64,000 nt of DNA, from NCBI GenBank assembly GCA_024679065.1, contig JAGIQG010000016.1, forward strand, positions 50,158,001-50,222,000, read 5' to 3'. Every line of letters begins with the position of its first letter. Position 1 is the stretch's first letter. Of the stretch, positions 3,791 through 37,600 are shown in pieces. The translations under genes were made by a program, and so were the position numbers. The stretch is from Sphyrna mokarran (Eukaryota). The notes below the pieces were generated by a model. It was not told the DNA's origin and searched no databases. It saw nothing but the letters and a program-made list of their open reading frames with translations.

Positions 3791-5341
3791 GTTGTTTCCA
3801 AACAACTTGGAAACTTAAAATCAAAAAAGAAAGTATCAGTTTTCCACCTGGAAGTTCTCCCCAATAAGGTAACAATATCTTTAAGGATTAGCATTAGCAA
3901 TAGTGTTTAGCATTTCATTGCTGCATTTTTAAGAAACATTTTTGAAATGGGCAGCATGGTTGTACAGTTCTTCTGCTTCACAGCGCCAGGAACCTGGGTT
4001 TGATTCCTGGCTTGGGTCACTGTCTGTGTGGAATTTGCACGTTCTCCCCGTGTCTACGTGGGTTTCCTCTGGATGCTCTAGTTTCCTCCCACGTTCTGAA
4101 AGACATGCTGGTTAAGGACACTGAACAGGCACCGGATTGTGACGACGAGGGGAATTTCAAAGTAACTTCACTGCAGTGTTAATGTAAGCTTTACTTGTGA
4201 TTAATAAATAAACTTTTTAAAGTGAAATATTTGAAGGATACAGTTTTCTTTAGTCCCCCCGTTATTTATTTTCCAGTTTGACAATTTATCTTTTTGGAAA
4301 ACTGCTTATGCATTTTATATTTCCCTGACTTTTACCTATAATTGGAAGTCTATATCCAGTATATGATGGTTAGATGTAATTTGGAAATCTAGTTAATCCA
4401 AATTGGTTGTTAGTGGAAGGTGGAGTAGACATAATCATTAGGATGGTGAGAGTTTTCTTCATTCAAAAATTAAAACATACAGGCTGGAATTCTCTGACAT
4501 CACCCGCGGCTGGGATCCTGCAATCCTGCTGCATTGAATGGCATCTTGGCTGAGCGCCAAATTCTCTGTTGTCACTGGCAACAGTGGCAGGACGAACCAG
4601 ATTGGAGAATTCTGGCCATAGTTTCGGTAATGTATTTAAGGATGAATAGGCAAAATTCAAAGGTAAAAGTAATATTGTTTTCATAATAATATTAGTCTGC
4701 TTCTTAAAGCAGCAGGATGTGGTTTGAATCCCATGTGAAATAGATATACAAACATCAAATTACAAAACAGTTAAGGGTGCTAATAGGTTACACATACTGG
4801 TATTAACCTTATATCCATTTAAAGTTCCGACTGAACAATTTTTCAATTTGTTCTTGGGTTGTGATCATCACTGGCAAGCGAGCATTATTACCCATCTCTA
4901 ATTGCACTTAAGATGGTGTTGATGAGCCACCTTTTTGAACTGCTGCATTCCATGTGGTGCAGGTATATTCAGAGTGCTGTTAGAGAGGGAGGGAGTTCTA
5001 GGATTTGATCCAGTGATAATGGAGGAACAAACATATTCCAAATCAGGGAGATGTGCGCCTCGGATGGGAACTTGAAAATAGTCATTTTTCCTTGCATAAG
5101 TGCCTTCATTCTTTGAGGTTATACAGGCCAAAGGAGTTGCGTCAAAGGAGCTTTGGTAAGTGCTGCAGTGATGATATACTCTGCTGCTACAGTTTGCCAA
5201 TGGGAGTGAATGTTTAAATGGTGAATTAGATACTGATCAAGTGGATTGCTTTGTGCTGGATGGTATCAAGCTTTTTCTTTGGTTCTGCACTCAATCAGGC
5301 AAGTAGACATTACATTCTTGACATATGTTTTGTAGATGATG

Positions 5342-6093
5342 ATGTAGAGATACCGGCGTTGGACTGAGGTAAACACAGTAAGAGGTCTGACAACACCAGT
5401 TTTAAATCCAACCGATTTATTTGATAGTAAGCTCACAAGCTTTCGGCTTTATAGCCTTCGTCAGGTGAATGAGATGTTCTGGTCTGCAATAGCACACATA
5501 TCAACACAGACAGTTTACAGATTGCTGATTAGAATGCAAATCTTTACACCTAACCTGCTATTCAAGTCTTAAACTGGCTAACAATGTGAGTTCCCCCATG
5601 GTAAATGAATCAGACTTTCAGAAGCTGCTACATAAAATCTGTGCACCTTTTGACAGAGACAGAGAGAAATGTGCATGCTTGGGCAGTAAAAGCAGTTTAG
5701 TTCATCCACATTCTTTCAGTTTAATAGTATGCTAAATACTCTTTTTGTCTTAAAAGCAATAAACATTCACACAGAATGATAAGCTGTGCTCACTTGCACC
5801 TAATCAATCAATGTTCAGAGTTGGTCCAATGACCTATCCTTGTCCTTAGCAGCATGGTGGCACAGTGGTTAGTGCTGCAACCTCACATTGTTAGCCACTT
5901 TAAGACTTGAATAGCAGGTTAGGTGTAAAGATTCGCATTCTAATCTGCAATCTGTAAACTGTCTGTGCTGATATGTGTGCTATTGCAGACCAGAACATCT
6001 CATTCGCCTGATGAAGGCTATAAAGCCGAAAGCTTGCGAGTTTACTATCAAATAAATCAGTTGGATTTAAAACTGATGTCGTCAGACCTGTAA
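5342..6093. mobile_element. Composite Penelope-like insertion: inverted terminal arms (5383-5590 / 5882-6089) enclosing captured local DNA; 12-bp TSD
   Basis: 208-bp inverted arms with about 11 mismatches by hand count; TSD TTGTAGATGATG at 5330-5341 and 6094-6105; CTGA(T/C)GA..GAAA core in each arm. Confidence 0.8.
6008..6045 (+). ncRNA. Minimal hammerhead-ribozyme-like motif in Penelope-like terminus (second copy on minus strand ~5428-5464)
   Basis: CTGATGA-A-GGCT(ATAA)AGCC-GAAA-GCT(TGCG)AGT-T: core, stem II and a short stem III; stem I not clearly resolved. Confidence 0.55.
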
Positions 6094-7488
6094 TTGTAGA
6101 TGATGGGCAGGTTTGGGGAATCAGGAGATGAGTTAACAGATGCAGAATTCCCTGCCTCCCACCTGCTCTTGTAGCCACAGTATTTATATGGGCGATCCAG
6201 TTAAGTTCCCATTCAATGTTAACCTTCAGAATGTTGATGGTAGGGAACTCAGCAATTGTAACTCTGAGTTACCATTGCTGAACCCCTACCATCAAGAGGA
6301 ATTGGCTGGATTCTTTCTTGTTGGAGATAGTCATTGCCTGGCACTTGTGTGCCATTCAAGTTACTTGCCGCATAGCAGCCCAAGCCTGAACATTGTCTAG
6401 GAATTTTACTGCATACTGGCACAGCTATACTACATGCACCATGCTCTTTTCTAGTGGCTAGCTTATGAAAATCCTCCACGGATGAATACCAAACCGATAC
6501 TGAGGTTTTCCAGATTCTTAGAGGAAGATTTGATCATTGGGCAAACAATGCAAACTGTTGCTGACTATGAAACTGTACATCATTGAGACTCAACTGTCTG
6601 CAACATAGGACAAAGGAGAGGGCAAGGCAGAAGATGAAAATTAAGTATAGAATTTTTTAAGCTCACACATACATTGCTTCCAGTCTTAGATGATTCAGAC
6701 ACCTGGGTCATCTAAGGTATTGTATATGCTAGCAATGACTCACAGAGTGACAGGCCTTGCCATATCCATCAAGTGTTCCAAACAAATGATTAATACTAAT
6801 ATCCCAATGTAACCTTATCTTTAAGGTATTTTATCTGATGAGGAAGAAAGGACATTCGCTGAAAGAGGAAAATATAAAGCAAATAAAAGAAGCATGTCTG
6901 TTTTTTGTTTTTAGGTACCAGAGGTAATTCTACAGTGTTGAAACTTGTGTCCCAGGTAGAAAATATCAATTGAAAATGGGATGTTCCAATAGAAATACTG
7001 AACTGGGTACTGTTTATATCCTCTGTTGGAAACATCAGATTCAAAGATAAAATATAGAAAGGGAACTTTCAATGAAAATTCAGACAGATATTTTGCTACA
7101 TTGTTAATTGCAGTATTATTTACCGATTTTAAATTAACTTTTGAGTTTTTATTCAAACTGTTGAAAATATACAGTATAAACTGGTGTCTTTCATGTCTTA
7201 TCCTAGTTATGCAATGTCTGTCAGGGCCTTCTATCATCCTGATCTCGAATCACTTTTCTACTAAAAATAGTGAATGGATCCTGCAATTACAAATTAATGG
7301 TCTCCAGCTCTGATCATTATTTCCTGATGTGCAGTCTTTTCTTTTGTGCCTGCAATGAATGATCGACAAGATTTAGAGCAAATTTAAATGCTATTTTAAA
7401 AAGAAAATTCTGCATCAGAGTGATAGAGCACCAAATCACAAGAGAAACAATGGATATAGTGAAGTAAAATGTTAAATTTGTTCTGCAG

Positions 7489-7780
7489 CCATGGTAAATG
7501 GATCAGGCTTTCAGAAGCTGCTACAAAAAATCTGTACATCTTTTGACAGAGACAGAGAGAGATGTGCATGCTTGGGCAGTAAAAGCAGTATAGTTCATCC
7601 ACATTCTTTCAGTTTAATAGTATGCTAAATACTCTTTTTGTCTTAAAAGCAATAAACATTCACACAGAATGATACGCTGTGCTCACTTGCACCTAATCAA
7701 TCAATGTTCAGAGTTGGTCCAATGACCTATCCTTGTCCTTAGCAGCATGGTGGCACAGTGGTTAGTGCTGCAACCTCACA
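7489..7780 (+). repeat. Donor segment duplicated at 5596-5887
   Basis: 292 bp, about 8 mismatches by hand count, no indels; unique DNA plus the first ~40 nt of a V-SINE. Confidence 0.95.
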
Positions 7781-8042
7781 GCGTCAGGGACTCGGATTTG
7801 ATTTCTGGCTTTGGTCACTGTCTATGTGGAGTTTACACATTCTCTCTGTTTGCATGGGTTTCCTCCAGGTGCTCTGGTTTCCTCCCACAGTCCAAAAGAC
7901 ATACTGGTTAGGTGCATTGACCATGCTAAATTCTCCCTCAGTGTACTCGAGCAGGTGCCAGAGTGTGGAAACTGGGGGATTTTCACAGTAATTTCATTGC
8001 AGTATTAATGTAAGCTTACTTGTGATACTAATAAATAAACTT
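7740..8042 (+). mobile_element. tRNA-derived V-SINE (HE1-like), tail type A; others at ~3949-4215(+), 16132-16415(+), 16973-17262(+), 27790-28065(+), 35019-35305(+), 44546-44822(+), 46612-46925(-)
   Basis: A box TGGCACAGTGG, B-box-like GGTTCGATTCC, V-domain TGTGGAGTTTGCACATTCTCCCCGTGTCTGCGTGGGTTTCCTCC; tail TAACTTCATTGCAGTGTTAATGTAAGCCTTACTTGTGAC..TAATAAATAAAC. Confidence 0.85.
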
Positions 8043-10557
8043 TTTCAAAAGAGAGGAACAGGGAGATTAATAATGGCAGGGTGGTGGGAGAGCATTTCTC
8101 TCACTGTTTTGCCCTGTCTTCCTTCTGCCTGTGTTTTATGAAGTAATGTTAGTAGTCTTTGCATCTTTCGTTTGTAAATTTTCAATAACAAAAAGGTTTT
8201 CCTCACTTATGCCGCAAAAGTATCAATTTGGACTGTGAACATGTAAATAATGTGATGGTGTTCATCCTGTTCTTTTAAGAACATGAATTTTCTTTTTACC
8301 TTCGATACTCATAGTATTCCAAATCCTCAATTTAGAAAAATGCTAATTTATTCATACTTTGTATGCCCACTTTAATAAAATCGACCTCATTCCCATTTGA
8401 AATGATAGTCTTTCTAATGAAAAATAATTCACTGGAGCAACAGTCCTTCTCTTGATCTATGACATTAGGTGCCTTGTCATATTAAGATCTATTTTTATCA
8501 ACTATATGTTTATTACTTGTTTGCAAAAATCAAAATTTAGAACTGCACAATTAGAGATTTTAAAACATTGCATAACCATACAAATCTTTTAAAAAAATGT
8601 TTAGGCCTCAAAAATAGCATCATCACAAAGCAATGTGATGATGTAAATTCTTCTCTTTGCTGTTAAAATAAAGCTGGTTAATGCTGCAATTGAAATAATA
8701 GTATTTCATAATGCACTCTCGTGTCACCAGAGATTACTACTGTATGGGCCATGCCCATATATATATATACATATATATATATAAATCATGTGACTGCCAC
8801 ACATCGTTATATAACTTGGAATTTAGATATACTGTTACCACAAAATCTACAATATACCCATTAACAAATTGACTGCAACAGATCAATCACAAGCTGCAAT
8901 CAAGCAACTCAAATAGTTAAATGTAACATCTGCACAATTTGTTCAATTCAGCCTTAAGAGGTCAAGAATTTCACAGAACATGGAAGGTGGCCATTTGGCC
9001 CATTGAGTCTGCATCAACTCTCTGATAAAGTATCTTAGCCAGGCCCTTTTATCCTACATATTTACCTTGCTCTTCCCCCTAATCTACACGTCCTGGAACA
9101 CTTAAGGGCAATTGAGAAAGCAAATCCACCTAACAAGTGACTTGGAGCCACTTGTATAAGCAGTTACCATTGATCTCTGTAGATTATTCCCAATCATTCT
9201 TCAACAATCTGGATATATAAACTGTAAGCAGGAGCCTACACAGCAGTTTCTCATTCTTCACTAATTCTGAGCTGGAATTGGCTTTTTCTCACAATGTAAA
9301 AATACTTTCAATATCAGCATTTGTATGCTAAATATATTGTTTTATATGCTGCTTTTGTTCACAGATCATAGGAAGATTTGATAAGTAAAAAAGTTCGGTA
9401 CTCACAAAGTAACTCATGTAATACATCTTATTTTGCTTGCTATACATTTGTTATAATGCCTTCTGCAGGGGCCATGCAGCACCATATAATATTCCATTAA
9501 AGAACAAGTTTCCTTGTGAAAAATATTGCAATAAAAGCAGCAACTCTATTCTGAACGTGGAATATGATAAAATATGGATATACTGCCCAGTTGTTAGGTA
9601 CGAATCTCAGCACCACAATGGTGATGATTTGCAATTTATCACCGGAACGTAAAACTGTCTTGTGGGTTATCCGTTACAAAAACTGTCTCCTCTTCCATCA
9701 GATCGATACAAAACTTTCCATAAAGACCAACACCGACCTTAGTTTCTGGTGGCAAGTTGTAAATTGCCACCAGCATCTCCACTTGCTGAAGGAGAACATG
9801 GCAGCTTGAATACAAATGTGCCGATGGAGTGGCCAGTGAGTTGAACCTCCCTCAGTTTCTTCATGATGAAGTTTCCCAGTGGAAAGAATAATGGTCAACA
9901 CAGCACAGAAATCCAACATGTAAATGAACACATTTAGGTTTTTCTGAAAATGTTCACAATTCAAATATTCTCTTGCTGGATAAAAGAGTGGGACAAGATG
10001 ATACCGGACAAAAACGAGGAAAAATACATGTGTTTTTAATTGAAGTTTTTGTTCCCGACTGGCTGAGTACATACAGTGTCACGTCGCAAATTTCACTTCA
10101 TACACAAGTGAAATTACAACTCGATGAACAGTAAAACAAAACAGATACAAGCCATAGGGTAACCTTCCAAATCCGTGCTGGCAGTGGGCGTAGAACCAGA
10201 CACGTTGCTGTGACTTGCATTGAAATCAAATGCCAGCAATTTTCCAGTGTGTGCTGGGAGCAGGCAAGAGTCCCTGCTGGCAACACATAACTTGGAAAGT
10301 GACCCCTCCCTGGACTTGGAACCAAGGCAAACGATTCTGTCATTTATACATTATATCATACAAGGATACATTTTCCACTTTGTGTTCATGGCTTTACGCC
10401 TTGTCCACTGAGCATATTATTCAAGGAAGCAACCAGCTCAGCCCGTCATTTCCCCAATGTCAGTCTCAACGGAGGGGAAATAAAGGATTGCATTCACATG
10501 ATTTTTCACTATACATGTTGGGTGGTGAAGAACCCACAGAAAATTCACCTACTAATC

Positions 10558-11292: not shown

Positions 11293-11388
11293 TCACTCCT
11301 CACAGATAGGGCAACATTCATCTTGCTTCGTTACTGGATTGTTGCAGCTCTGAGGGCAGGTTGTCACCACACATTTGACCTCTGTATC
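11293..11388 (-). CDS. PXDNL: exon ~23 coding part, second half of VWC and stop
   Basis: CTACTTACAG|GAT ACA ...; [31 protein letters not shown]; completes a 10-Cys VWC domain. Confidence 0.92.
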   Translation of the reverse strand, partial: DTEVKCVVTTCPQSCNNPVTKQDECCPICEE

Positions 11389-14300
11389 CTGTAAGTAGCA
11401 AGTGGTAAATAAAAAGATTACATACATCTCTCACAGAAGACCAAAGACTAGATTTTTAAAAAGAGGTTGGGGTATAGGTTGAATCAGGCTTGGAGGCAGG
11501 CATGTGAATATTTTGCCACTTTCGTAAAGGTGGTGATTCCTGCCACAATCCTGACCGATGCCATGTGGAAAGAAGTCACCCTGCCATTGGATTGGCTACC
11601 CACTAGCAAGCAGCTGGGTGACCAATTTAGGTCCATTAGATTTAACTAAGAGACCTATTAAGGCCTGTTCTCATGCTATTTCCAACCAGCAATAGGTCAT
11701 CCCATTTCCAGACCAACATAGTGGGATTGAGACAAAGGGGAGGATGTGACTTTACATGAGGACACTTGCCACACCTGATATGACCGTCTATTGGTAATTT
11801 GTTGCACTACATTGTCCCTTTAAGATTGTCATGTGGCTGCAGATCTTAAAGGGACAGCTTCAGTATGCGGCAAGTTGGTCTCCTGCACCAAATGTTTCGG
11901 AGCACTCTGTGGCTGTGCAGGTCAGAGAAAATACTGCCCCTGTTGTTCACTGTCTGCATCCTTACAATTAGCTCCCTCAGCTGTTGAGGCTGCCAATCAC
12001 CCAGAAACTCATTGGGCCTTATATTGCCTGCATTTGGAAAGGGAAGGGGAGAAAATGCGTGGCAATGCAGAATGGAAGGTGAGGTTAATGATGAAGTGAG
12101 TGACGAGGATCAAAGTGAGAACAAGATACGTTGATTGAGTGGATGATTCATAGAGCTGTAGGCAATGGCCTAGTAGTGTTATTGCTTGACTATTATTCCA
12201 GAAACTCAGCTAATGTTCTGGGGGCCCAGGTTCGAATCCTGCCATGGCAGGTGGTGGAATTTGAATTCAATAAAAAAAATCTGGAATTACAAATCTACTG
12301 ATAACCATGAAACCACTGTCGATTTTCAGAAAAACCCATCTGGTTCTCTAATGTCCTTTAGGCAAGAAAAACTGCTGTCCTTACCTGGTCTAGCCTGCAT
12401 GTGACTCCATAGCCACAGTAATGAGATTGACACTTAACTGCCCTCCAAAGACAATTAGAGATGGGTAATAAATGCTGCCAGCCAGCAAAGCACATATCCC
12501 ATGAATGAAGTGAAAAAAGGTAGTGATAGGAGCAAATGAACAGGTATGTTTAGGAGGGAGAATTAGGAAATATATTCTGTTGCTGGCGGAAGTTTCTTTG
12601 TAAGTCATTTGTTGTTTATCAGTATTTATCTGCTCCTCCAAGGTCAGAAAAAAAAAGCTGGAGAATATGATGAGTATTCCTTTCCTGCTAAACATGTCTT
12701 TTGATAATGTCACACAGAAATATCCATTTTGGATGCCTAAAACTTTAAATGGCAGTGATGGATTCAGACCGTAGCCGCCCTCAATAGGGGCATTTAATCA
12801 TTACATAAGGTCTTCTGGCAAGACCAGTTCTTATTGTTCATCCTGAGATAAATTTGAGCATTTGCTTAGCCAGAGACAACAATTAATAATCACATTTTGT
12901 TTCCAGATTCTTTGAAATCAAATTCAAACTCTCAAACCGTCAAAGTAGAATTTGAATTTACGTTCACCATATGGAGCTCCAGATTATATGTCTGGGGTAA
13001 CATTACCACTCCCATTACTTTAATCAAAATTAATTTAGGTAAACATTTATTTGATGAAAACTACACAGAATTTTAGATGGGCCTATCCCTCAGCTATTAT
13101 TACCAATATCAGAAACACAAAGTGAACACAACTTTTTACATGCATTTAAATGAATCTAGGGATTAGGAAATCCAAATCTGTTTCATACTTCCTGGTCTAA
13201 TTAGTTCCTCTGGAGATAGGATTTTTGTTGTTCTACAGACCAGAGTTAACTTATGTAAATAAATTTGTGCTGCATTACCTCATCATGTAGGTGGATCGTA
13301 ATTTTGATGGGAGTGAATTGACCGCCCTTTATACACAGGCAGGTATTCTCCAGCCATTTGTGTCGATGGGATTTCCCGCTCCTGCCGGCAGCATGCCCCC
13401 TGCTATGGGTTCCCAGCAGTTTGCGCTGCCTTCAATGGGGAATTCCCAGTGGTTAGCACTGCTGCCTCACAGCATTAGGGTGCCCGTGTTCAATTCCTGG
13501 TTTGGGTCACTGTGTGTATGGAGCTTGTAAATTCTCCCCGTGTCTGTGTGGGTTTCCTCCAGGTGATCCAGTTTCCTCCCTCAGTCCAAAGATGTGCAGG
13601 TTAGGTGCATTGGCCAGGCTAAGTTGCCCCTTAGCGTCAGGGGGACTAGTTTGGGTAAATGCATAGGGTTAGGGCCTGGATAGGATTGTAGTCAATGAAG
13701 ACCCAATGTATGGACTCTTTCTGCACTGTAGGGATGAAGGCAATTTACAACTTTCCGAGATTCCTTTCCTACCTTACAGAGGCACAATGTGCATGGATCT
13801 TTCTGCCAGTGTTCATCTTCGCGTCTTATATCCCCATCCTTATCGATACAGCCTGTTAATTTCAAGTGAGCTTCAAGCTTTTCTATCTATATTTTGTTTA
13901 AAAAAAAGTTCATGTTGAAGATTGCTAACAAACTTTTTGATTTGAATTTTCCCATATTTTCAGAAAATGTCATGGAAATGTTCCATTATTAATGCAGAAA
14001 TGAAGGCCGGGATTTTCCGGTCCCGCTATGGCAGGACCCATCACGGGAGATCCGGCCGCCCAGCCGAAAGTCCATTGATGTTCTGTGGGACCAGACAGTC
14101 CTGGCAGTGGGTGGAGCCAGAAATGCCCGGCCTTGTTACCACTGCAATATTCTCTCCCACCAACTTTGCCATCCCAAATGAGGAGGCAAAGGACTGAACC
14201 TGGGAGCGTTCTGGTCTGTATAACCCTCCAGTATATTCTGCTGCATCTACTCATTGATGAAAGGAAACACAATGTGAGCTGAAAATGAAAACATCACGGA

Positions 14301-16595
14301 GGTGATCTTACCAAAAAAAATTTTAACTGTCATAAAAAGTCTGAAAATAGGAGTTTTTCACCCTTACTTTCACACCAACATGGGTCCCTAACATGCCCTC
14401 CTGATCATGAACCCTTCCAGGACCTACCCCTGAATGGTTCCCCCCACAAACTGCCCCCCCCTCCCCCCGCCCAACCCTGTCCCTGCAAATGACCCAACCC
14501 TTTGCATAGCCTCCCTTCTATAGCCCCCCCCTTGTGCATCCCCCAACATCATGGCCCCATCCTATTCAGGTCACATCCCCTTTTCACTGCCTTACATACT
14601 TACGATCCCCAACTGGGCATTGCCAGGATGCCAGGTGGACACTGTCTGATAGACACTGGCTGGCCATGCTCCTGAGCACATAAGGGCTTTAATCCCCATG
14701 TTGTGGCCATGGCAGCTGGTCCCCACTTCTGCAGAGCAGTAGTGATTCTCACTGGCATGAGATGTTCTGGTCTTGAAGAGCAGAGCCTCGAAAGCTTGTG
14801 TGAGTTTACTATCAAATAAATTGGTTGGACTTAAACCTGGTGTTTTCAGACTTACTGTGTTCACCCCAGTCCAACACCAGTATCTCTACATCATGACATC
14901 CCACCAGCAGGGAAGAAGATTCCAGGAGGTGAAAAGAAGCCGTGAGGATTAAGGTAAGTTCTTTAACTCTTGTTAAATCTGTGTTAATAGGCTTTGCACC
15001 CTTTCTGGGCATGAAGCCATGCTTGCCAGCTAACCAGAGCAGGAAAATAGCAAATGCACAAATCACTATTTTAGGCTCAGATATTATCTTCCTGGCTCAT
15101 CACACAATTAACTGGTATGGTGAGCCAGTGAGATCGCAGCCCATTCTTTTCAAAGTATATTATAATTCTTAATGAAATGCAAACAAAATTGAATGCACAG
15201 TATTGTGCAAGTACTCCAAAACTCCACCCTACTCCAGAATGAACCATAATAAGTAGAGGTCTTCTTGAAGAGTTACTTAAGAGTCATGTAATTGTCAGAT
15301 ATATGTCAGGAATATAAAAACATAAAAGACTATTATGATACAGCTGGTTGGTGTGTTATAGTTATTGTAAGTAAATATCTTTCTGTACTGTAGGCACACT
15401 AATTAAATACTAGTGACTTCAGTTATGCACCTTCGAAATTAAAAACCAGAAAAGGAATTCCAACTGCAGCACAGCAAGTTGTAGCTTGCTGCTTTGAGAA
15501 AAGTCAGAATAACTTCATAGAAAAGGTTAGGGTGTGTATTTCCTGAAATAATGTTATTCTAATGTCAAGATTCTGTGTAAACTTTGAAAAAGCTGGAACA
15601 TGAGCTGAAATCACAGGTGAAACAGTTCGCGCAGGGGTAAGCAGGTACATGTAGGCAATACACATTGTGGGCAGAAGTTTCCATTTTGGGTGCCTTTGGC
15701 AAACTTGCACTCAAAGTTACAAGGTTTGAGGGGAGTATTGTTCTGAAGTTGCTGCTGAAAGTTTACCAAATACAAAGTCTGCCATTTAATAGAATGTAAT
15801 TTATGAGAAATATTTTTGCATATTCCTCACCATATTTCAGAATGGTTAGCTGGTGAAGCTTGATTAATACAGCTGAAAATAGGATTTTCACAAATTTTAA
15901 GCATTTTAAGTCTAGTCCACCATCTTTAAGTTACGCTACATTCAAAAAAATTATTGTTAGACTTCAGATCAGAAACCCCAAAGTTTATTATAAAGCCAGA
16001 CCTGACTCCAACTTTTGTTTTTATTTTTGGCATAGATGTGAGGATAAATTGTTTCATGGTAGGTGTGATTCTACTGACACATTAGGAAACTTTTATCAAA
16101 ACAAACGTTATTTTAAAAATGCAGTTTAAATAGCGGCACGGTAGCACAGTGGTTAGCACTGCTGCTTCACAGCGCCAAAGACCTGGGTTCGATTCCTAGC
16201 TTGGTTAAGTGTCTGTGAGGAGTTTACACATTCTCCCCGTGTCTGTGTGGGTTTCCTCCAGGTACATGAGTTTCCTTCCATATTCTGAAAGACATACTAG
16301 TTAGGCGCATTGACTTGAACAGTCACTGGACTGTGGCGACTAGGGAATTTTCAAGTAACTTCACTGCAGCATTAATGTAAGCCTTACTTGTAACTAATAA
16401 ATAAAAATGTTAAACTTTAATGAAAGCATTTACCAATTGAAATACTTAAACATGATAAGTTATGGTTCTAACTGACCTATCTTTATTAGTTCCAATTTAA
16501 CCAAGATTCCTCTTCAAAATCAGTTAGCGAAGAATATAGGCTTGTGTGTTTTACTTGATAAAAATCCTACAGTCTTTGAGCACCCCTGGAGAGAA

Positions 16596-16627: not shown

Positions 16628-19600
16628 ACCTGTCTTCTGACAGCTCCAAAACAGCAGCTTCCAGTGAGAAACAGGAAAAGACACCTCTTGCTTCTTGAAA
16701 TTGCCTGTTTTCCTCAAACCTTAGCATCTGTCCTTCACATTACTCTGTCTCTTGCCAATCAACTAATCAAACCCTATTCGGAAACCCCAGGGGAAAAAAC
16801 AAACATCGCAAAAAAGCATTATTCAGATTAAAATAGACACCCCATTGTCTGGGATTGTTTATTCTCCTGCATCCTCAGTATGTGGATTGCCTGGTTGCAG
16901 ATAAATTAGCAATAGGTAAACAGAGATGACTCCTAAACATACATTTCTTAAAGATATAGTATCATCACACTATGGCACACTGGTTAGCACTGCTGCCTCA
17001 CAGCATCAGGCACCAGGGTTTGATTGCCGGCTTGGGTCACTGTCGGTGTGGATCTGCATATTCTCCCCATGTCTGCGTGGGTTTCCTCAGGATGCTCTGG
17101 TTTCCTCCTACTGTCCGATCGGTGTGCTAGTTGGAGGCATTGGCCATGCTAGATTCTTTCTCAGTGTATCTGAACAGGTGCCAGAGTGTGGCTACTAGGG
17201 GATTTTTGTAGTAACTTTATTGCAGTGTTAAGATAAGCCTAATTGTGACAATAATAAATAAACTAAGCTGAAACTAACCATTAACTGGCCACATTAGTCA
17301 GTTCCTTTGTAATATAGAAATAGAAAAGAATTCTTAAAAATAAGCCTATACATATGCTCAAGAACAGCAGTTTAATTTTAAGAGCCTTGTCAAAGATCTA
17401 CAGATACAACTAGCAGAAGCTTGCGATGATGATTAATTTGATCTGGGATGTTGCCAATTTTGTGATTACAGCCAGTTTCTTCTACAATTCTTTTTATCCA
17501 GAGCAAAATATCACTGAAATTCAATTAGCACTCACTGGAATTAGCACTCGATTTAATTTGCACTCGATATTCCTGATTTTTTTGCTTCCTTGGCTGATAT
17601 TTGGTGAATTGCACTGGAAAAACCATCACAATCTAGTGTAAATACCAATATTCTTTTTACCTCAGCTTATTGCACACAGGCTATTGGTAAGAAAGTCTCG
17701 CTTGCCTCTACAGATTTTAAGTTCTTAAATTAAATGCAGTAACTTCAATTCATCTATGGTACATGTGGATACAACTAAATCAGCAATTACAATCAGGAGT
17801 GTCTATAAGTTGCTGCAAATGGGGGAAACGTCATTGATGCTGTAATGTCTATTCTGCCAGCATTACACCAAAGGTAAATTGTGGAGTGTTGCAAAGGCAA
17901 GGTTTCACAAAATGGTTATGTTTTGAACAGTCTCTTAATGCTTAACTAAACATTAATAAATCTTTTCATTTCTGTAGTTTAGAATATTAGTTGCCTATTA
18001 GACTAATAAAGAAAGATTGGATAATCAACAATAGTCAACGTTGGATAGTCCAGTATCCGCTGGAGTTTAGAAGAGCAAGAGGTGACTGAAACTCTAAGAC
18101 TGGGATGGACTTGACAGGGTGTATGTGGAAAGGATATTTTCTCTTGTGTAAGTATCTAGAACTAGGAATTACGGTTTAAAAATAAGGGGTTGCCCATTTT
18201 AAGATAGAGATGGGGAGAATTTTTTTCTCTCAGAACATAGTGAGTTTTTGGAACTCCCTTCCCCAAAAGTCAACAGAATCAGTCTTTGAATATTTTTAAC
18301 GCAGATTGTTAACTTGTTTAGCAAAAATCTAAGTGATTGGATGTGCGCTGACACCAGCAAATTACAGGTCTTAACGGAGCCATTTAGTATTACTGTAAAC
18401 AGGCTGTAACCTTTCATTTAGGTGAATTTCGGCAAAGCCACCTATCCGCTGCCCAAAGATGGACAGGTTATGCAAGTCAGCCATGCTAAATTGCCCCTTA
18501 GTGTCCATAGTTGTGCAGTTAGGTGAATTAGCCATGATAAACATAAGGGATTATGGGATGGTACTGAGTAAAATGCTCCTTGGGAGAATTGATGCAGACT
18601 CGATGGGCCGAATGGTCTCTATTCGCATTGTATGGATTCCAAGGTAGTGAAAGGTTATCAGGAATAGGCAGGGGGTTAAAATCAGATCAACCATGATCTT
18701 ATTTAATGACAGAACAGGCTTGAAGAATTGAGAGATCTACAACTACTCCTAATCGGTATGTTTGTATGTATTAGGGAATGTTTAGTTTATTGATTATGCT
18801 CTCACTACTAATGCTTAATGCTGACTTGTGGTGTCAGATCATCCCCCATTTTAAACAACAAAAACATTATTAAAGAAAAATGGTTGCTGTTATAGAGTTC
18901 AAACAAATAAGAAGCTATATTTGTCATGCAAACCCATATTTAGATTTTACAAATAAAATCCAGGCAGTTATATCGTTTACTAAATGCCTGAAACAATCCT
19001 ACCTTTCGCCTCAGGTTTTCCAGTTCAGCCCCACAGTTGTCAAGCTGTTTGGTGGAGTTGTTGGAAATCTTTTCCTGAACTTCTCCATCTCTAAAGGACA
19101 TGACCATATAACAAAATCTCAAACTGAGAACATATCAGAAACATGATGGAAATTAGAATAAATGGACCCAACATAACTATCAAGTAATATTGCATAATTT
19201 ATGTTTTTAATACATGTATTATATGAAATAGGAAGCAAAGCACCTTCGGAAGGCTTCCTAATATATTACACATTGCATGGTCTCGAAGTTACTGTTTATG
19301 TTGTTGAGCAAATTAATTGGTTATATACAGTGTTTCTTCACTAACAATTTTAGTGAACACAGTGGAAGATCTCACAACACCAAGTTAAAGTCCAACAGGT
19401 TTATTTGGTATCACAAGCTTTCGGAACACTGTTCCTTCACTGGATGAGTGATGAAGGAGCAGCACTCAAAATGAGCTGTTCTCAAAATCAGTTTTACCTT
19501 TCAGGAATTGAATTAATTTAGAACAATGACTGCAGGATGATTTCAATTAAGCGGATTACTCTGCAGCTGAGCTAAAACAAACCGATGTGTGTTATAAATT

Positions 19601-28600: not shown

Positions 28601-31600
28601 ATATAGCAACAAGACTGGCTAATATGTTAGGAGCATAGGATTTAGTCACAGCAGTAGACCATTCAGCCTTTCAAGCCTGATCCATCATTAACTAAGATCA
28701 GGACTGAACTGGTTGTGGTCTCAACTCCACTGTGCCATCTGCACATTCTGCAAACCACCCCCCCGCCCTTGCCCATCCCCTCACACCAATACTAACCCTT
28801 GACATCCTTCTTTTTGAACAGAGTTGTTCAAAAAGTTGAACAACTCTGCCTTGAAGAAATTCAAAGATCCAGCCTCCACTGCTTTCCAGGGAAGAAATGC
28901 TACCATTGGAAGGGAAAGATTTCTCTTCACAACTGTCTCAAATGCAGATCACATTCTTAAACTGTCCCCTCTAGTTTCTAGTTTCTCTCACAAGTGGGAA
29001 TGGCCTTGCAGTGTCTACTCCATTAAATCCCTTCAGGAACCTACACAACTCGATCAAATTGCCTCTGATTTTTCTAAACTTCCACAGGTAGGGGACCAAC
29101 CTATTCAGCCTTTCTTCTTAAGATGAGCCCCTCACCCCAACCAAAATAATTATGATTCTTCTCTATTCATTTTTGATGGATAGTTTTTGATAGACATGGG
29201 AGTCAGAAGTTATGGGGGGGGGGGGGGGGCGGGCAGCAGATGACAAAATGGTATCGAGACCACATTCAGATCAGCCATGATCTTGCTGAATGGTGGAGCA
29301 GGCTTGAAGGACTGAATGGCCTAAATTACAAAGGGTTGTGAATGTGATCGAATCCATCACATAAATTAGTCTCCTATCCATTGACTCCATGTACACTTTC
29401 TGCGACTTCAGAAAAGTAGCTAGTATAATTAAAGACTTCACGCATCCGGACATACTCTCTTTCACGTTCTTCCATTGGGGAAAAAGGTATAAAAGTCTGA
29501 GATCCTATATCAACCAATTCAAGAACAGCTTCTTCCCTGCTGCCATCAGACTTTTGATGACCTTACCTCACATTGAGTTGGCCTTTCTGCATACCCTGTG
29601 ATTGTAACACTACATCTTGCATCCTTTCCTTTCCTTCTTCTCTATGTATTCTAAAAACAATAGGTTTAGTCTGTATAACATGCAAGGAAAAATACTTTTC
29701 ACTGTCAACCTGATATCCTTTGCATTGTACTCTATGCAACATCGGCCAGGATGGTTTAGACTCTATTCAATGTTGCTTTAGTGGCCCACCAGAGGATCCA
29801 TAGTTTGCTGACATCCAGCCACTTCTGTCAACAGAACGTGAAAACCTGCAGCCTATTTATAGTATTGTTTTAAGGCTACATTATTAAAAAACACACACAC
29901 ACACACACACGTATACTAACTACATGTGAACATTGCAATGAGCCCCTAATTAAGAAGAGTTCACTTTTTGATTGAGTCGTTACCTTCACAGCAGTCCTGC
30001 CACATCCGGAGGTCAATCTGTGGAATTTCCCTGCAGCTGACAAAGCCCTGGGGGTAATTGGCCACTCTGAAGACGTCTGGCTGAACCTGCTGGATGTTGT
30101 CTCCATTGTCACACATAACCCGTGCAAGTGAGGCTTGTTTAATCTGAGTTAACTGGGTTGGGGTGAACACTCCTGGATTTTCATACCAGAATCTGAGCAA
30201 ATGTAAAAAAAAGTTCCAATTGTCTCAATAACTCTCGCAACATGAAAAGATAGCTAACACTGTTGCACTGATAAGCTTTTGTCCATAATGGATGATTCAC
30301 AGCACTGACAATCAGTGGCTGGTGCTATTGATATGATGAATAATTTACCCAGACAGATTTAAATCTGGTATATTAATCCCATCCATAGAATAATCCCATC
30401 CATACAATGCAGAAAAAGAGGCCATTCGGCCAGTGAGTCTACACCGACTCTCTGACAAGCATCTTTCCCAGGCCCATCCCCCCACTCTATCCCCAGGACC
30501 CCATGCATTTACCATTGCTATTCCACCTAACTTACACAAACGTGAACACTAGGAGGCAATTCAGTGTGGCCACTCCACCCGACCTGTACATCTTTGGCCT
30601 AAATTCACCCAAACGAAAGGTTACAATCTGTTTAGTGTAAGACTAAATTACCCATTTAAGACCTGTAATTTGCTGGTGTCAGCACACATCCAATCACTTT
30701 GTTAAATAGTCTATCAACTTGGACTCTTTTACAGAACATGAAAGCCTTCAACTTCAACTTTTCAAAACAGCCGTAAGAATTCCTTAACTGATAACCCAAC
30801 AATACACCACTGACTATCCTTGGGAAGGTGGCTTATCAGCTGAAAAAAACTTTGAGACATGCTGAGGTTGTGAAAGTGTCGTATGAATGCATGTTTTCCT
30901 TGAATAGACTATGCAGTGTAACACAGTCACAGAAGCAGGAACATCTCTCTTTCCTCTGTCCCTGCAAAACAAGTAACAGATGCACAGAGTTCCTCAGCAT
31001 TCTTGGGTAAATGTGCTTGATCAGCATCTTATAGTAACTGTGCAAGTGAATACAGAGCCAGATTTGGACATGATTCTTATAATGTCCATGTCAAAGAATT
31101 CAATAAAAATCATTAAATAAAAACAAATGGATACAGAGTCAGAGAGACAAGGATTGGGAATGAGATTAGGGAGAACATGGGAATAAAAATTGTCAATGCA
31201 GTGCCAGAAATTAAGTTTGTTTAAAAGATTTAATTCTCTGTGGAAAAGAGGCAATACTGTTAACGTAAATAGTGGAAAACAGATGCTGGATGGATGAGCT
31301 ATCATGGACTGAATAGCATTTGTTATCTGCATTTAGCTTATGGCTAACTTTCATTGTTCAGAATAAACATTTGAATGAGATATTGGAGGCCGACCAGCAG
31401 CTGTACAATAATATCCTGCTATACACTTCCACGTCTCATTTAAAATTTGTGAGGAAGCCATTCTGTGAAATTTGTGAATCAGTTTTGTAATGCTTTGCAA
31501 TGATTCCAGATGCGTCAATAGATTTCACATGATATTGGAACATCACAAACTTTGAGAAACCCCTGGAATTTCCTCAGTTTCTTCTGAATATTTCTTTCTT

Positions 31601-34600: not shown

Positions 34601-37600
34601 CAGCGATATTCTTCTACCTTTTCCCCATAACCTTTAATCCCCGTACCAATCAAGAACCTATCTTTCTCTGCATTAAAATATACTCAATGATATGCCCTCC
34701 ATAGCCTTCTGTGGCAATAAGTTCCATAGATTCACCACTCTCTGGCTGAATAATTTCCTCCTTATCTCAGTTCTGAAAGATTGTCCTGTTTTTGCTAAGG
34801 ATGTGTCATCAGGTGTAGACCAGATGAACAAGCTTCTTCTGACAATTGCTTTTTCACCGTTGTACTTAGTTGAAAGATTGGAACGGGTTTCAACAGTGAA
34901 GTTCTAATTCCTCATCAACAATGGTCAGTAGCAAAATACTGCCAATAATTTTCTCCAGTTGAGTAATTTCATCCTGCGTCACTATAAGATAAACCTGATG
35001 GGAAATGGAAAGGGAGAGGGTGGCACGTGGTGAGCATTGCTGCTTCACAGTACAAGGGACCCGGATTCGATTCCCGGCTTGAGTGACTGTCTGTGTGGAG
35101 TTACGCATTCTCCGCACGTCTGTGTGGATTTTCTCCGGGTGCTCCGGTTACCTCCCACTGTCTGAAAGATGTACTGGTTGGCTGCATTGCTAAATTCTTT
35201 CTCAGTGTACCCTAATCGGCACCAGAGTGTGGTGCCAGGGGATTTTCACTGTAACTTTATTGCAATGTTAATGTAAGCCATCCTGTGACACTAATGAATA
35301 AATTTAAAGAGAAAGTTATAAGGGAATCTTGTTTGGATAGTAACCTAGAAATGAATAACTCCAAATTTTATATAGGATAATGCCATATCCGATCTTAGCG
35401 CTGTTGATATCAAGCAAAGGGAAAATCAAATGAACATGTTTTTGTTTATTTTAGTTAAATTAGGGACCAGCTCCATAAATTACGTTAGAAGAGGTGTACT
35501 TGTCTATTTTATTGTTCTGCTTACCTTTCTAGCTTTTTGCGAATCTCTGGATTTTTGATCTCATTTTTCAAATCTTCGAAGTCCTGAGCAGATGTGAGGT
35601 TGCAGAAAACCCTGAAGTCATTGTACGGAGGTATTCCATGATCACGGCCACGCTGGATATTCATTGCTGCTAAATCCAGGGAGACAGCGTGCACCATGGA
35701 AAACAACTTCTCTGTGAGCTCCAAGTTCAATAGCTCAGTCGGCACCCTCATTTTCCCAGGGACAGCAAAGAGGCCTCGGAGGAGTGGGTCAATGCCGCCC
35801 TCCTGGATGAGCCTGAATGGTGAGAAGAAGGCTTTGTGCAATGGGAGGTGGCCCTCCGGAATTGGCTGGAAGGATTCATTCAACCGGTACAGAATCGGGT
35901 TGATGAGCGTGTGACCAAAGCGAAAAGCTGCGGTGGCAAAAGCATTGACAATGCCTGCGTTGATATTTGGATTATAGCCCTTGAAGTCACCTAGTACTTT
36001 CATACCGACATCCCCTAGGATTTTGGATAACCAGTGTGAATAGGTGATGTGCTGCATTTGTGCGGCAACTATCTTGCGCGCTTCGTGATAGATGGTATCG
36101 CCATCCCAGTGCGGGTTGAGTTTCAGTAGCTCTGTCGCAATTCGGTTGTGTTCACGGAACCACAGGGTGTGTATGGCTGTCAATGCAATGTGCTCATTGG
36201 ATCTGTGATCGCCAGCGAGGAAGCATGGAATAGGGCTCTCATTGGTGTCCCTCATGCACTCTGTGGGTGGGCCTGTTGCAAAAGGCAACAAGTGTTTGCC
36301 AGACTTGGGCACAACCTGACCGGCCTTTAATAGACCCCGTTGGTTGGTTAGGTCCCTCAACTCCTGCGCCTCTTGCTCCGTACTTCCATAAACATTGGAC
36401 GCATCGATGTAGGATGTCAAGTGATTAATCTGTTCTCTTGGGTAGACAGAATTCATCAACAAGGAGGTCATTCCGCTCCCGCACACGGGACTGGAGCGCA
36501 CAAAGAACATACACCGGCCATTCCTCACACGGGGATCGTCATCTGGGATCAAAATGGGAAAGCAGGGGGGATCATTGGTGCAGAACCTGTTGCATGGTTC
36601 TCCATCAGAAAAGCGAGACATACTCAGTGCAGCCACTGTTAAATCCAAGTCGTGGTCTAGAAATTGGCCCCACTGCATGACCAGATGTGTGTACTGGTCA
36701 TCGGGAGTGATTGTTTCTGTACCAATTACTGTGGTGGAGACCAGGCGGGGCAATGGAAGAGGCTGCCTTGTATCCTCCACGTTCACATTGGAGCCCCTGG
36801 GAAGGTTAAATCCATTTTCGTACACCGGTTTTAGAAGTCTTTCAAAAGCAGTGAGTGATGCTCCCCACATCGGATGCTGCAGGTTGTTACAAGTACCATC
36901 GTGTGTTCTATACTTTTGGTGAAAACAAATGTCTACACAGTCAGGAGACCGTCTGTGAGTAGTGCATCCCGAAATGTTAGCAATCATGTTAAGATATCTG
37001 GGAGAAACCAGATCATTATAGCGATAACCTAAAAAAAATGAAGCGTCAAATCAAATAAAATCAGAACCAAATGTAATCGCTGATCACAAGCAGTGTTTTA
37101 AATGAATTTAGGTACGTGGAATTCTCGCACATTCTGTACCCTCTCTTTTCCTTCTCTCCATGTACTCTATGAATGGTATGCTTTGTATGTATAAAAGAAC
37201 AGACAAAATTACAGCACAGGAACTGGCCCTTTGGTCCTCCAAGCCTGCACTGATTATGCTGCCTGACTGAACTAAAACTCCCTACCTTTCCGGGGATCTT
37301 ACCCCCGTATGGCACACAAGAAACAGTACTTTTCACTGTATACCAATACAGTGACAATAATAAATCAAATCAACATGGGATGAAATTTTCACCTGCCAGG
37401 GGAATTGCAGTCGGGAGGGCATATGTAATATTTTTCCCAGCACCTTCTCACGGAGTTCTGGCTTATTCTGACCTCTCTGCAATTTTATGCTTGCACAGGC
37501 AAGGCCAGCCTGCCCAGCTTTGACCCAACTGAAGTTCTTAAGTGCTCAACTCCATCAGCAGTCTCCTTTTAACACTGGGCGCTCTGCTTTCTCCTCCCAT

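What the first reader, a model, noticed from the sequence alone, without database searches (positions are those of the whole stretch)
5330..7780. Penelope-like insertion that captured 292 bp of neighbouring genomic DNA between two inverted arms
Seen, in order: TSD TTGTAGATGATG (5330-5341); element terminus 5342-5590; 5-nt filler TTCCC; 5596-5887, a ~97% identical copy of 7489-7780 lying 1.9 kb away; inverted copy of the element (5882-6089); GTAA filler; second TSD (6094-6105). The switch from captured DNA back to the element falls on a CTCACA microhomology. The captured piece ends ~40 nt into a SINE that is complete only at the donor site, which fixes the direction of copying. The host LINE reads through cleanly if the insert is removed. 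Known: Penelope-like elements form inverted terminal repeats and carry minimal hammerheads. Inference: one integration event with element > local DNA > element template switches, a route by which these elements could duplicate host sequence.
Basis: partly seen in the sequence, partly recalled or inferred. Interest (0 to 1): 0.82.

Follow-up and report, generated by a model that had tools for sequence, protein, structure and literature searches.

The report
Penelope-type hairpin insertion with copied neighbour DNA
A short ribozyme-carrying Penelope-type retroelement landed in this shark genome as two head-to-head arms, and the gap between the arms holds a 292-base copy of DNA lying 1.9 kb away: a clear single example of a capture already reported for these elements.

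Summary
There is an exact 12-nt target-site duplication (TSD) and two inverted arms (208 nt, 94.7% alike). The left arm carries 41 extra outer bases. TTCCC and GTAA are fillers. Bases 5596-5887 copy 7489-7780 (8 substitutions in 292, no indels), and a CTCACA overlap sits at the switch back to the arm.

The arms show the published insertion signature of Penelope-like elements (PLEs): head-to-head arms, a one-sided tail, a TSD and a minimal hammerhead ribozyme. Contigs of four runs hold the arms at huge summed depth. The spacer is not part of the family, and the donor is single copy. Two relatives, about 7% diverged, hold the donor joined to its unique flank; in one the contig runs on into the SINE (short interspersed repeat) head. 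This fixes the direction as donor to insert.

Capture during integration is likely but unproven. Non-CpG divergence is alike (2.4% for the arms, 2.7% for the copy). A later break at the palindrome centre, repaired from nearby DNA, is not excluded. No read bridges the inner junctions, and no orthologous empty site could be fetched.

Capture of unrelated DNA between PLE repeats with TSDs is in print for a rotifer (PMC3846280). Earlier notes of this scan describe the hairpin architecture elsewhere in this genome; none found held both 'Penelope' and 'captured'. I class it as a new member of a known kind, of moderate interest.

The parts
5330..5341 (.). Left copy of the 12-nt target-site duplication, TTGTAGATGATG
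   Evidence: family D11: exact repeat of 6094-6105.
5342..5382 (-). One-sided 41-nt 'tail'. It is the outermost 3' part of the element and is present only on the left arm.
   Evidence: It has no partner in the right arm. It matches the 3' end of copy 2 at 14789-14891, which ends ...GTATCTCTACAT. A 30-40 bp tail at one end only is described for PLEs (PMC8557442, PMC3846280, PMC11167929).
5383..5590 (-). Left arm. The element's sense strand lies on the - strand and its 5' end faces the centre.
   Evidence: 94.7% identical to the reverse complement of 5882-6089. Summed contig depth is 1e5-1e6 in four runs.
5431..5470 (-). Minimal hammerhead motif of the left arm: core CUGACGA, helix I of 5 bp
5591..5595 (.). 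Filler TTCCC, matching neither the element nor the donor
   Evidence: It runs into the CC that starts the copied piece.
5596..5887 (+). Captured copy of 7489-7780, in the same orientation as the donor. Its last 30-39 nt are the head of a SINE.
   Evidence: 284 of 292 identical, no indels. Summed depth is 0-6.3 in the two spacer bins, so it is not part of the repeat family.
5882..5887 (.). CTCACA microhomology, shared by the end of the captured piece and the inner end of the right arm
   Evidence: flank comparison of the two copies.
5882..6089 (+). Right arm. The sense strand lies on the + strand. It starts at the same element position as the left arm's inner end and stops 41 nt short of the element's 3' terminus.
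6002..6041 (+). Minimal type-I hammerhead. Its parts are helix I AUUCGC/GCGAGU, core CUGAUGA, an extra A, helix II GGCU/AGCC, GAAA and the palindrome AGCU. U17 is the predicted cleavage site, after 6035.
   Evidence: One search gives the motif anatomy; the MFE fold shows helices I and II. In one search the core pattern hits only the two arms in 64 kb, with 0.17 expected. The features match the min-HHR traits listed in PMC4209133.
6090..6093 (.). Filler GTAA between the right arm and the TSD
6094..6105 (.). Right copy of the TSD
   Evidence: family D11.
7489..7780 (+). Donor of the captured piece. It is single-copy DNA plus the first 30-39 nt of a SINE.
   Evidence: Contigs of X1 (6322-7770, 2 differences), X3 (6326-7765) and X7 (7066-7790) join it to its unique upstream flank.
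7745..8042 (+). Complete SINE at the donor site. Only its head was copied.
   Evidence: 18 further copies at 67-79% in the window, besides the captured head. Loose ends lie behind 8043 and SINE-to-SINE joints run 8042->5852.

Best explanation
**What it is.** This is a short, 5'-truncated or non-autonomous member of a very abundant Penelope-like element (PLE) family that carries a hammerhead. It integrated by target-primed reverse transcription at a staggered break, which gave the 12-nt TSD. It produced the family's usual head-to-head pair of arms.

**The arms.** The left arm begins at the outer RT start and so includes the 41-nt tail. The right arm begins at the inner start and so has no tail; 4 untemplated bases precede it.

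**How the spacer arose (inferred).** Before the two halves were joined, the growing + strand of the left arm stopped at 5590. It gained TTCCC and jumped to a template of - polarity 1.9 kb away. That template was either the - strand of the DNA or a - strand transcript. The strand copied 292 nt (7489 to 7780). Its new 3' end, CTCACA, then paired with TGTGAG at the inner end of the other arm's cDNA, or of its own cDNA folding back. That pairing closed the insertion.

**Shown:** the anatomy, the family signature, the uniqueness of the spacer, the direction of copying and the junction features.

**Inferred:** that the capture happened during integration, which strand was extended, and whether the template was RNA or DNA.
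For: **Anatomy.** TSD, arms, fillers, duplication and microhomology are.

**PLE signature.**
- The inverted arms face each other with their 5' ends.
- The one-sided tail is 41 nt. The literature gives 30-40 bp at one end only (PMC8557442 passages) and 31 bp in a rotifer (PMC3846280).
- The minimal hammerhead has an extra base between positions 9 and 10.1, a G10.1-C11.1 pair and a palindromic 15.2-16.2. These are the traits listed in PMC4209133.
- The core pattern occurs 2 times in 64 kb, only in the arms, with 0.17 expected.
- In vitro, an Anolis PLE cleaves and extends both DNA strands. It starts reverse transcription at two internal sites, and the interval between them is the tail. Its RT start lies 111-118 nt into the ORF and its hammerhead cut lies 26 nt after the start codon, so 85-92 nt separate them (PMC11167929). 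Here the tail-bearing end lies 95 nt after the predicted cut (my arithmetic).

**Family abundance and spacer uniqueness.** The arm bins have summed depth of 3e4 to 1.8e6 in X1, X2, X3 and X7. The two spacer bins have 0-6.3. The donor bins of X1, X3 and X7 have about 11-36, while X2 has no depth there.

**Other copies.** They join arm to arm directly. Joints run from 5427-5430 to 6034-6053, near the predicted ribozyme cut, with 0-7 extra letters between (tables 5 and 5c). The 292-bp filling is therefore the exception.

**Direction.**
- The SINE is complete only at the donor.
- Relatives about 7% diverged hold the donor joined to its unique flank (records 19 and 26).
- At 7675 the window's donor has C. 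X1, X3, X7 and the captured copy have A.

**Same age.** Non-CpG differences are 5 of 208 in the arms and 8 of 292 in the copy. Six of the 11 arm differences are CpG-type. The spacer has no CpG.

**Real rather than an artefact.** Both repeat pairs differ by substitutions only, with no indels.
Against: - No contig bridges 5590/5596 or 5887/5888. The best run (X1) has depth 0 in 5706-5806, and its left contig ends 24 nt into the element. Contigs drop variants, so this is silence and not refutation.
- No orthologous empty site could be fetched.
- Both arms end at the same element base. While the spacer was being copied, 35 of 287 positions had a 3' hexamer with a complement somewhere upstream. Annealing exactly at the arm's last 6 nt therefore needs a special reason. 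Two candidates are a common RNA 5' end and a pre-existing palindrome centre, and the second is the rival.
- All-site divergence is 5.3% for the arms against 2.7% for the copy (Fisher p=0.16). This would also fit a somewhat later capture.
- Rfam found no hammerhead at E<=1.
- No RT/endonuclease ORF was tied to this family here.
Confidence: 0.55

Rival explanations
1. Two steps. The element first inserted as an ordinary perfect fold-back, with the arms abutting at 5590|5882. Later the tip of this palindrome broke, as hairpin or cruciform centres tend to do. Host repair then patched the break by microhomology-primed synthesis on DNA 1.9 kb downstream (SDSA, MMBIR or polymerase-theta-type templated insertion). 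The repair left TTCCC at one joint and CTCACA at the other.
For: - It explains without further assumption why the spacer sits exactly at the centre of symmetry.
- Other copies of the family join arm to arm with 0-7 letters between.
- Unchecked notes of this scan list many perfect hairpin insertions in this genome.
- All-site divergence of the arms (5.3%) exceeds that of the copy (2.7%).
- A donor in cis within 2 kb, a filler and a microhomology are what templated-insertion repair leaves. That description is my general knowledge; of the MMEJ review PMC12426944 I saw only the search listing.
Against: - Non-CpG divergence is the same (2.4% against 2.7%), so any delay was short compared with the age of the insertion.
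- Neither arm lost a base at the centre, which is unusual for break repair with resection.
- 292 nt is long for polymerase-theta-type insertions (my general knowledge).
- Notes of perfect hairpins elsewhere suggest that such centres can persist (unchecked).
Confidence: 0.3
2. Assembly or sequencing artefact: a fold-back chimeric read, or a mis-join between two repeat copies, created the arm-spacer-arm structure.
For: No independent contig covers the inner junctions or 5706-5806. PLE inverted structures are known to trouble assemblies (PMC8557442).
Against: - A chimera would give identical copies. Here the arms differ at 11 of 208 sites, 6 of them CpG-type, and the copy differs at 8 of 292 sites, all substitutions with no indels.
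- An exact 12-nt TSD frames the whole structure.
- X1 matches 5100-5365 exactly across the left TSD/element junction, though only 24 nt lie inside the element.
Confidence: 0.03
3. The arms are terminal inverted repeats of a cut-and-paste DNA transposon that carries a captured host fragment, in the manner of Pack-MULEs.
For: Long inverted arms, a TSD of about 12 nt and a host fragment between the arms. The comparison with Pack-MULEs is recalled, not drawn from any call.
Against: - The outer ends are not equivalent: one arm lacks the terminal 41 nt.
- Other copies are single arms or have arms of other lengths. Copy 2 is at 14757-14891, and the joints are.
- The arms carry a sense-strand hammerhead and match the PLE tail geometry.
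Confidence: 0.03
4. Reverse direction or independent origin: either 5596-5887 is the original and 7489-7780 the copy, or both are members of a dispersed repeat.
For: Only the bare fact that there are two copies at 97%.
Against: - The SINE is complete only at 7745-8042.
- The non-SINE 256 nt has no other match in the window and single-copy depth at the donor.
- Relatives hold 7489-7765/7790 joined to the unique upstream flank.
- SINE copies in the window are only 67-79% alike, yet the captured SINE head is identical to the donor's.
Confidence: 0.02

Closest known systems
Penelope elements of the rotifer Adineta vaga with captured host DNA (Arkhipova, Yushenova, Rodriguez 2013, PMC3846280; passages and section 9 read)
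   Same: The rotifer elements have inverted pLTRs, an optional 31-bp tail on one inverted pLTR and short TSDs (8-10 bp). [quoted passage not shown] It proposes self-priming and template jumps.
   Different: This case is in a vertebrate (a shark). The captured piece sits at the head-to-head junction of two inverted arms. Its donor is identified 1.9 kb away in cis, and both junctions are readable to the base (a 5-nt filler and a 6-nt microhomology). The passages I read do not say where the rotifer fragments came from.
Canonical PLE insertion architecture and its in vitro basis (Craig et al. 2021, PMC8557442, passages; Frangieh et al. 2024, PMC11167929, whole Main text)
   Same: An inverted 5'-truncated copy, a 30-40 bp tail at one end only and a hammerhead in the pLTR. 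Both DNA strands are cleaved and extended, and there are two internal RT start sites whose interval is the tail.
   Different: Those descriptions have no foreign DNA between the arms. This copy has no ORF, and its family's autonomous partner was not identified.
LINE-1 twin priming with a template switch (Mendez-Dorantes et al. preprint, PMC11702581; passages read)
   Same: Two reverse transcripts are primed from the two ends of one staggered break. In one reported insertion a middle segment is attributed to a template switch of one RT before end joining. Templated insertions at insertion sites are also reported.
   Different: Twin priming yields an inversion of adjacent, non-overlapping parts, whereas here both arms cover the same 208 nt. 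The enzyme is of the GIY-YIG/telomerase-like PLE type and not L1 ORF2p. The middle segment in that paper comes from the same mRNA, whereas here it comes from neighbouring genomic sequence.
Non-LTR retrozymes / solo pLTR derivatives of PLEs (Li, Clavereau, Pollet 2026 preprint, 10.64898/2026.07.22.740005; abstract and passages read)
   Same: A short non-coding unit that carries a hammerhead and is related to PLE pLTRs. The preprint reports such elements in the one chondrichthyan it sampled and describes monomeric dispersed copies.
   Different: Retrozymes are defined by tandem arrays. This copy is an inverted pair with a TSD and is not a tandem.

Membership tests
Penelope-like element (insertion signature) | An inverted 5'-truncated copy forming head-to-head repeats | tested here: met
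   Arms 5383-5590 and 5882-6089 are 94.7% alike, with their 5' ends facing the centre.
Penelope-like element (insertion signature) | A 30-40 bp 'tail' present at one end only | tested here: met
   A 41-nt extension at 5342-5382 on the left arm only. It is shared with the 3' end of copy 2. The definition comes from PMC8557442 and PMC11167929.
Penelope-like element (insertion signature) | A short target-site duplication framing the whole unit | tested here: met
   An exact 12-nt TSD.
Penelope-like element (insertion signature) | A minimal hammerhead ribozyme motif in the repeat (pLTR) | tested here: met
   All sequence traits of the min-HHR listed in PMC4209133 are present in both arms. Rfam models gave no hit. 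Cleavage activity was not tested.
Penelope-like element (autonomous element) | A single ORF with a telomerase-like RT and a GIY-YIG endonuclease | tested here: not met
   This copy has no such ORF. The ATG inside the hammerhead core opens only 14 codons (read), and the antisense frame of the arm found no protein relative. The copy is therefore a truncated or non-autonomous member. The family's autonomous partner could not be sought with these tools.
Non-LTR retrozyme | A tandem head-to-tail array of hammerhead-bearing monomers | tested here: not met
   The two units are inverted and not tandem.
LINE-1-type twin-priming inversion | The inverted and direct segments are adjacent, non-overlapping parts of one RNA | tested here: not met
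   Both arms cover the same 208 nt of the element.
Templated insertion at a DNA break (MMEJ/MMBIR/SDSA type) | An inserted stretch copied from a nearby locus, with microhomology and/or filler at the junctions | tested here: met
   The donor is 1.9 kb away in cis. CTCACA is the 6-nt microhomology and TTCCC the filler. This describes the joints. It does not say whether a PLE RT or a host polymerase made them.
TIR DNA transposon with captured fragment (Pack-MULE-like) | Equivalent outer termini on both inverted repeats | tested here: not met
   The right arm lacks the terminal 41 nt of the left arm.

The most novel reading that the evidence does not exclude
In PLE-rich genomes, the step that joins the two halves of a PLE insertion may be a regular source of small local duplications. 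On this reading the nascent cDNA, after running off its RNA and adding a few untemplated bases, jumps onto whatever nucleic acid is nearest. That could be nascent or read-through host RNA from the same locus. Here a - strand transcript would fit, and the only gene found nearby is on the - strand with its last coding exon 3.5 kb upstream of the donor. If so, spacers between inverted PLE arms would record which sequences lay beside the integration complex. They would also give the first in vivo read-out of template jumping by a PLE reverse transcriptase.
Probability: 0.2. Interest if true: 0.7.

Novelty: new member of a known kind. Interest (0 to 1): 0.45.

Why it matters
How Penelope-like elements join the two halves of their inverted insertions is still described in the literature as unresolved (PMC8557442, PMC11167929). 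This copy is a natural experiment that shows an intermediate. It has a run-off point, 5 untemplated bases, a 292-nt excursion onto an identifiable template 1.9 kb away and a 6-nt microhomology at closure. With a family this abundant, a genome-wide census of inter-arm spacers could test several things. One is whether such excursions are common. Another is whether they favour one arm or one strand. A third is whether they copy transcribed DNA. That census would bear on the mechanism and on how much small-scale duplication these elements cause in shark genomes. As a single locus, with capture already reported in rotifers, it is a useful illustration and not a surprise.

Tried and rejected
- **Rfam.** No hammerhead family matched 4800-8200 at E<=1. 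I therefore judged the motif by its anatomy. Rfam's models need a helix III that minimal PLE hammerheads lack; this reason is my own inference.
- **More family copies.** Two metagenome scans with short arm stretches gave 0 hits and 3 loci. All 3 loci were chance matches of 20-24 nt. A protein search with the arm's open antisense frame found no candidate.
- **Host repeat identity and continuity.**
  - The window holds no second copy.
  - A protein search with the flank ORF found no candidate.
  - Pfam at E<=10 found nothing for 3 flank ORF pieces.
  - The Atlas gave only unnamed clusters and one weak PF09004 lead at 0.90.
  - I recall this repeat as a common shark LINE whose - strand encodes the C-terminal part of an RT. 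That is recall only and is not used as evidence.
  - I first read the depth gradient across the flanks as a LINE truncation gradient. I dropped that reading, because depth at 85% likeness also follows conservation.
- **Orthologous empty site.** The contigs of the relatives stop in the repeats. X3 ends near 5315 and restarts at 6154. I then traced the neighbouring gene, a peroxidasin homologue on the - strand. The closest listed orthologue is from Mustelus asterias, at 97.7% over the 488-aa exon.
- **RNA or DNA template.** This could not be tested, because the single read-laying run had gone to DNA runs.
- **Rejected readings.** TIR transposon, reverse direction of copying and assembly chimera; the reasons are given under the rivals.
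- **Supplements.** Supplementary files of the papers were not opened. Figs S1-S2 of PMC11167929 (positions of the RT start sites and the tail) and the supplementary figures of PMC4209133 may bear on the tail and hammerhead comparison.


Full report
**1. Observation**

The region was read and scanned for repeats. A self-BLAST of the window followed, and base-by-base comparisons.

- TSD: TTGTAGATGATG stands at 5330-5341 and again at 6094-6105.
- Arms: between the two TSD copies lie two inverted arms, 5383-5590 and 5882-6089. They are 208 nt long and differ by 11 substitutions with no indels.
- Tail: the left arm continues outward for 41 more bases (5342-5382). These have no partner on the right.
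- Fillers: TTCCC (5591-5595) and GTAA (6090-6093) match nothing nearby.
- Duplication: 5596-5887 is a direct copy of 7489-7780, with 8 substitutions in 292 and no indels.
- Microhomology: the last six bases of that copy, CTCACA, are at the same time the first six of the right arm.

The exact 12-mer at both ends and the 6-nt overlap are each far beyond chance (about 5e-7 and 2.4e-4 by my arithmetic).

**2. What the arms are**

*Termini.* A second copy of the same family lies at 14789-14891 and ends ...GTATCTCTACAT. This is the reverse complement of the left arm's outermost bases. The left arm therefore ends at the family's full 3' terminus, and the right arm stops 41 nt short of it.

*Hammerhead.* Each arm carries, on its sense strand, a minimal type-I hammerhead. 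It has a CUGAUGA core (CUGACGA in the left arm, where position 7 is free to vary), one extra base before helix II, and a 4-bp helix II closed by G10.1-C11.1. GAAA follows, then the palindrome AGCU in place of helix III, U17, and a helix I of 6 bp (5 bp in the left arm). These are the traits that Cervera and de la Pena list for PLE minimal hammerheads (PMC4209133, passages). The core pattern occurs only in the two arms in the whole 64 kb, with 0.17 expected. Rfam's models did not report it.

*Literature match.* Head-to-head inverted copies, a 30-40 bp tail at one end only and short TSDs are the published signature of PLE insertions (PMC8557442; PMC3846280). Frangieh et al. showed for an Anolis PLE that the protein cleaves and extends both strands. 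Reverse transcription starts at two internal sites, and the interval between them is the tail. The RT start lies 111-118 nt into the ORF and the ribozyme cut lies 26 nt after the start codon, so 85-92 nt separate them (PMC11167929). Here the tail-bearing end lies 95 nt after the predicted cut (after 6035) and the tail-less end 54 nt after it. The geometry fits. This copy has no RT/endonuclease ORF, so it is a truncated or non-autonomous member.

**3. Evidence from public runs**

All four runs are Logan contigs, laid at 85% likeness.

- The arms carry summed depths of 3e4 to 1.8e6 per bin in X1, X2, X3 and X7. This is a very large family shared by several organisms.
- The two bins inside the spacer carry 0-6.3, so the 292 bp is not a normal internal part of the element.
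- The stretch 6413-7725, which includes the donor, is single copy in three runs. Depth there is about 17-44 in X1, 12-25 in X3 and up to 15 in X7, while X2 is almost empty.
- X1 matches 6322-7770 with 2 differences, so it is probably the same species.
- X3 covers 6326-7765 with 103 other letters and 32 gaps. X7 covers 7066-7790 with 47 other letters. Both are relatives, roughly 7% diverged. Both hold the donor joined to its unique flank, and the X7 contig runs on well into the SINE head.
- At 7675 the window's donor has C, whereas X1, X3 and X7 have A, as does the captured copy. One of the 8 differences is therefore a later change in the donor of this haplotype.
- The SINE is bounded at about 7745 and 8042 by SINE-to-SINE joints and by loose ends.

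Taken together, this fixes the direction of copying as donor to insert.

What the runs do not give:

- No contig bridges either inner junction.
- X1's left contig stops 24 nt into the element.
- X1 has depth 0 in 5706-5806.
- The contigs of the relatives break in the host repeat before reaching the TSD.

The tool itself warns that contigs drop variants and that a hole proves nothing, so I count this as silence.

**4. Other copies of the family**

In the same output, other copies join the left arm at 5427-5430 directly to the right arm at 6034-6053. Between 0 and 7 extra letters lie between them (AC, A, TTA, GT, T, AG, AAATTTA). This is a nearly symmetric junction within a few bases of the predicted ribozyme cut. 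One X3 copy has its right arm starting exactly at 5882 after 21 foreign letters.

The usual product is therefore a hairpin-like pair of arms with little or nothing between them. Unchecked notes of this scan describe the same architecture on other pieces of this genome. No note was found that held both 'Penelope' and 'captured'. The 292-bp filling is the unusual part.

**5. Mechanism**

*The frame.* The + strand 3' end at 5341 primed the left arm's cDNA from the outer RT start site. The - strand 3' end at 6094 carries 4 untemplated bases followed by the right arm from the inner start site. This agrees with both strands being extended in vitro.

*The filling.* The simplest path for the + strand is as follows:

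1. It stops at 5590.
2. It adds TTCCC. This runs into the CC that begins the copy, so 0-2 nt of pairing are possible.
3. It continues on a template of - polarity at 7489.
4. It copies up to 7780.
5. Its 3' end, CTCACA, pairs with TGTGAG.

That TGTGAG is either the 3' end of the right arm's cDNA or the end of the left cDNA itself folding back.

*The open point.* Both arms end at the same base. During copying, 35 of 287 positions offered some 6-nt self-complement upstream, so pairing exactly at the arm's last six bases needs a reason. One reason would be that both cDNAs ran to a common RNA 5' end. The X3 copy that starts at 5882 hints at a preferred end but is a single case. The other reason would be that the arms were already joined there. 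That is the rival: an ordinary fold-back insertion whose centre broke later and was patched from DNA 1.9 kb away.

*Timing.* The arms differ at 11 of 208 sites, and 6 of these are CpG-type transitions. The arms keep 5 CpG each, and the spacer has none. Non-CpG divergence is 2.4% for the arms and 2.7% for the copy. The all-site comparison gives Fisher p=0.16. The two pairs are thus of about the same age, well below the roughly 7% that separates the relatives. This fits one event but cannot exclude a short delay.

I put capture during integration at 0.55 and later repair at 0.30.

*Template.* Whether it was DNA or RNA is open. If it was RNA, it had to be a - strand transcript. The only gene I found nearby is a peroxidasin homologue on the - strand. 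Its last coding exon (11296-11430) aligns to the C-terminus of elasmobranch orthologues. That places it 3.5 kb upstream of the donor in the direction of transcription. A 3' UTR or read-through RNA could therefore cover both sites. This is untested.

**6. Readings that were excluded**

- *Assembly chimera.* It would give identical copies, not two pairs that differ by substitutions only, with CpG decay, inside an exact TSD.
- *TIR DNA transposon.* It would need equivalent outer termini, and the right arm lacks 41 nt.
- *Dispersed repeat or reverse direction.* This is excluded by the single-copy depth, by the orthologous contigs and by the SINE being complete only at the donor.

**7. Comparison with what is known**

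- *PLE architecture.* It is known (PMC8557442, PMC11167929).
- *Capture of unrelated DNA.* Arkhipova et al. [quoted passage not shown]
- *LINE-1.* A twin-primed insertion with a middle piece attributed to a template switch, and templated insertions at insertion sites, are described in PMC11702581.
- *Literature searches.* My searches for PLE capture or template switching and for Penelope in sharks listed no paper whose title or abstract start describes a vertebrate PLE with a locally derived spacer. That is a statement about those searches only.

This locus is therefore a new and unusually legible example of a known kind. Its value is that the donor, the direction and both joints can be read to the base.

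**8. Verdict**

I class the finding as a new member of a known kind, with interest 0.45. The decisive tests are long reads across the junctions, the orthologous site in close relatives and a genome-wide census of inter-arm spacers. None of them could be run here.

Noticed in passing
window 5427-5430 joined to 6034-6053 in contigs of other copies (tables 5 and 5c): In other copies of the family, the two inverted arms meet within a few bases of the predicted hammerhead cleavage site (after 6035), with 0-7 extra letters between. This suggests that ribozyme-cut RNA is often the template, or that cDNA folds back at that RNA end. The Anolis in vitro study saw no need for cleavage (PMC11167929).
   Followed up: partly
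window 5466/6006 and 5435/6037: Two of the 11 differences between the arms form a compensatory pair in hammerhead helix I: C-G in the right arm and U-A in the left. Both are CpG-type changes. This may be coincident CpG decay, or a hint that the two arms came from two different RNA templates.
   Followed up: no
window 14757-14891: A second family copy has a different layout. It has a direct 3' part running from the GAAA of the hammerhead to the full tail-bearing terminus. This is preceded by a short inverted piece from further 5' in the element (the equivalent of 5978-6003). It resembles a twin-priming inversion rather than a fold-back.
   Followed up: partly
window 19353-19424: A third, more distant relative (76%) of the arm. 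Its helix II sequence differs (GGAAC/GUUCC instead of GGCU/AGCC) and its core is altered (CCAGUGA). Helix II covaries between subfamilies.
   Followed up: no
window 6192-6308: Many contigs of other copies of the host repeat skip about 111-125 nt here (joints 6187-6191 -> 6303-6316). The stretch holds a perfect 12-nt inverted repeat (6234-6245 / 6284-6295). It is either a small secondary insertion in this copy or a deletion variant of the repeat family.
   Followed up: no
window 11296-11430, 29964-30224, 35521-36987, 57238-57591 (- strand): Exons of a peroxidasin homologue: an Ig-type exon, the large peroxidase exon, a later peroxidase exon and the VWC end. The closest listed orthologue is from Mustelus asterias, at 97.7% over 488 aa. 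The finding lies 3.5-6 kb downstream of its stop codon.
   Followed up: partly
window 7460 and 7675: The window differs from X1 (same species by likeness) and from both relatives at these two sites. They are derived alleles of the assembled haplotype. The change at 7675 created the donor's only CpG.
   Followed up: partly
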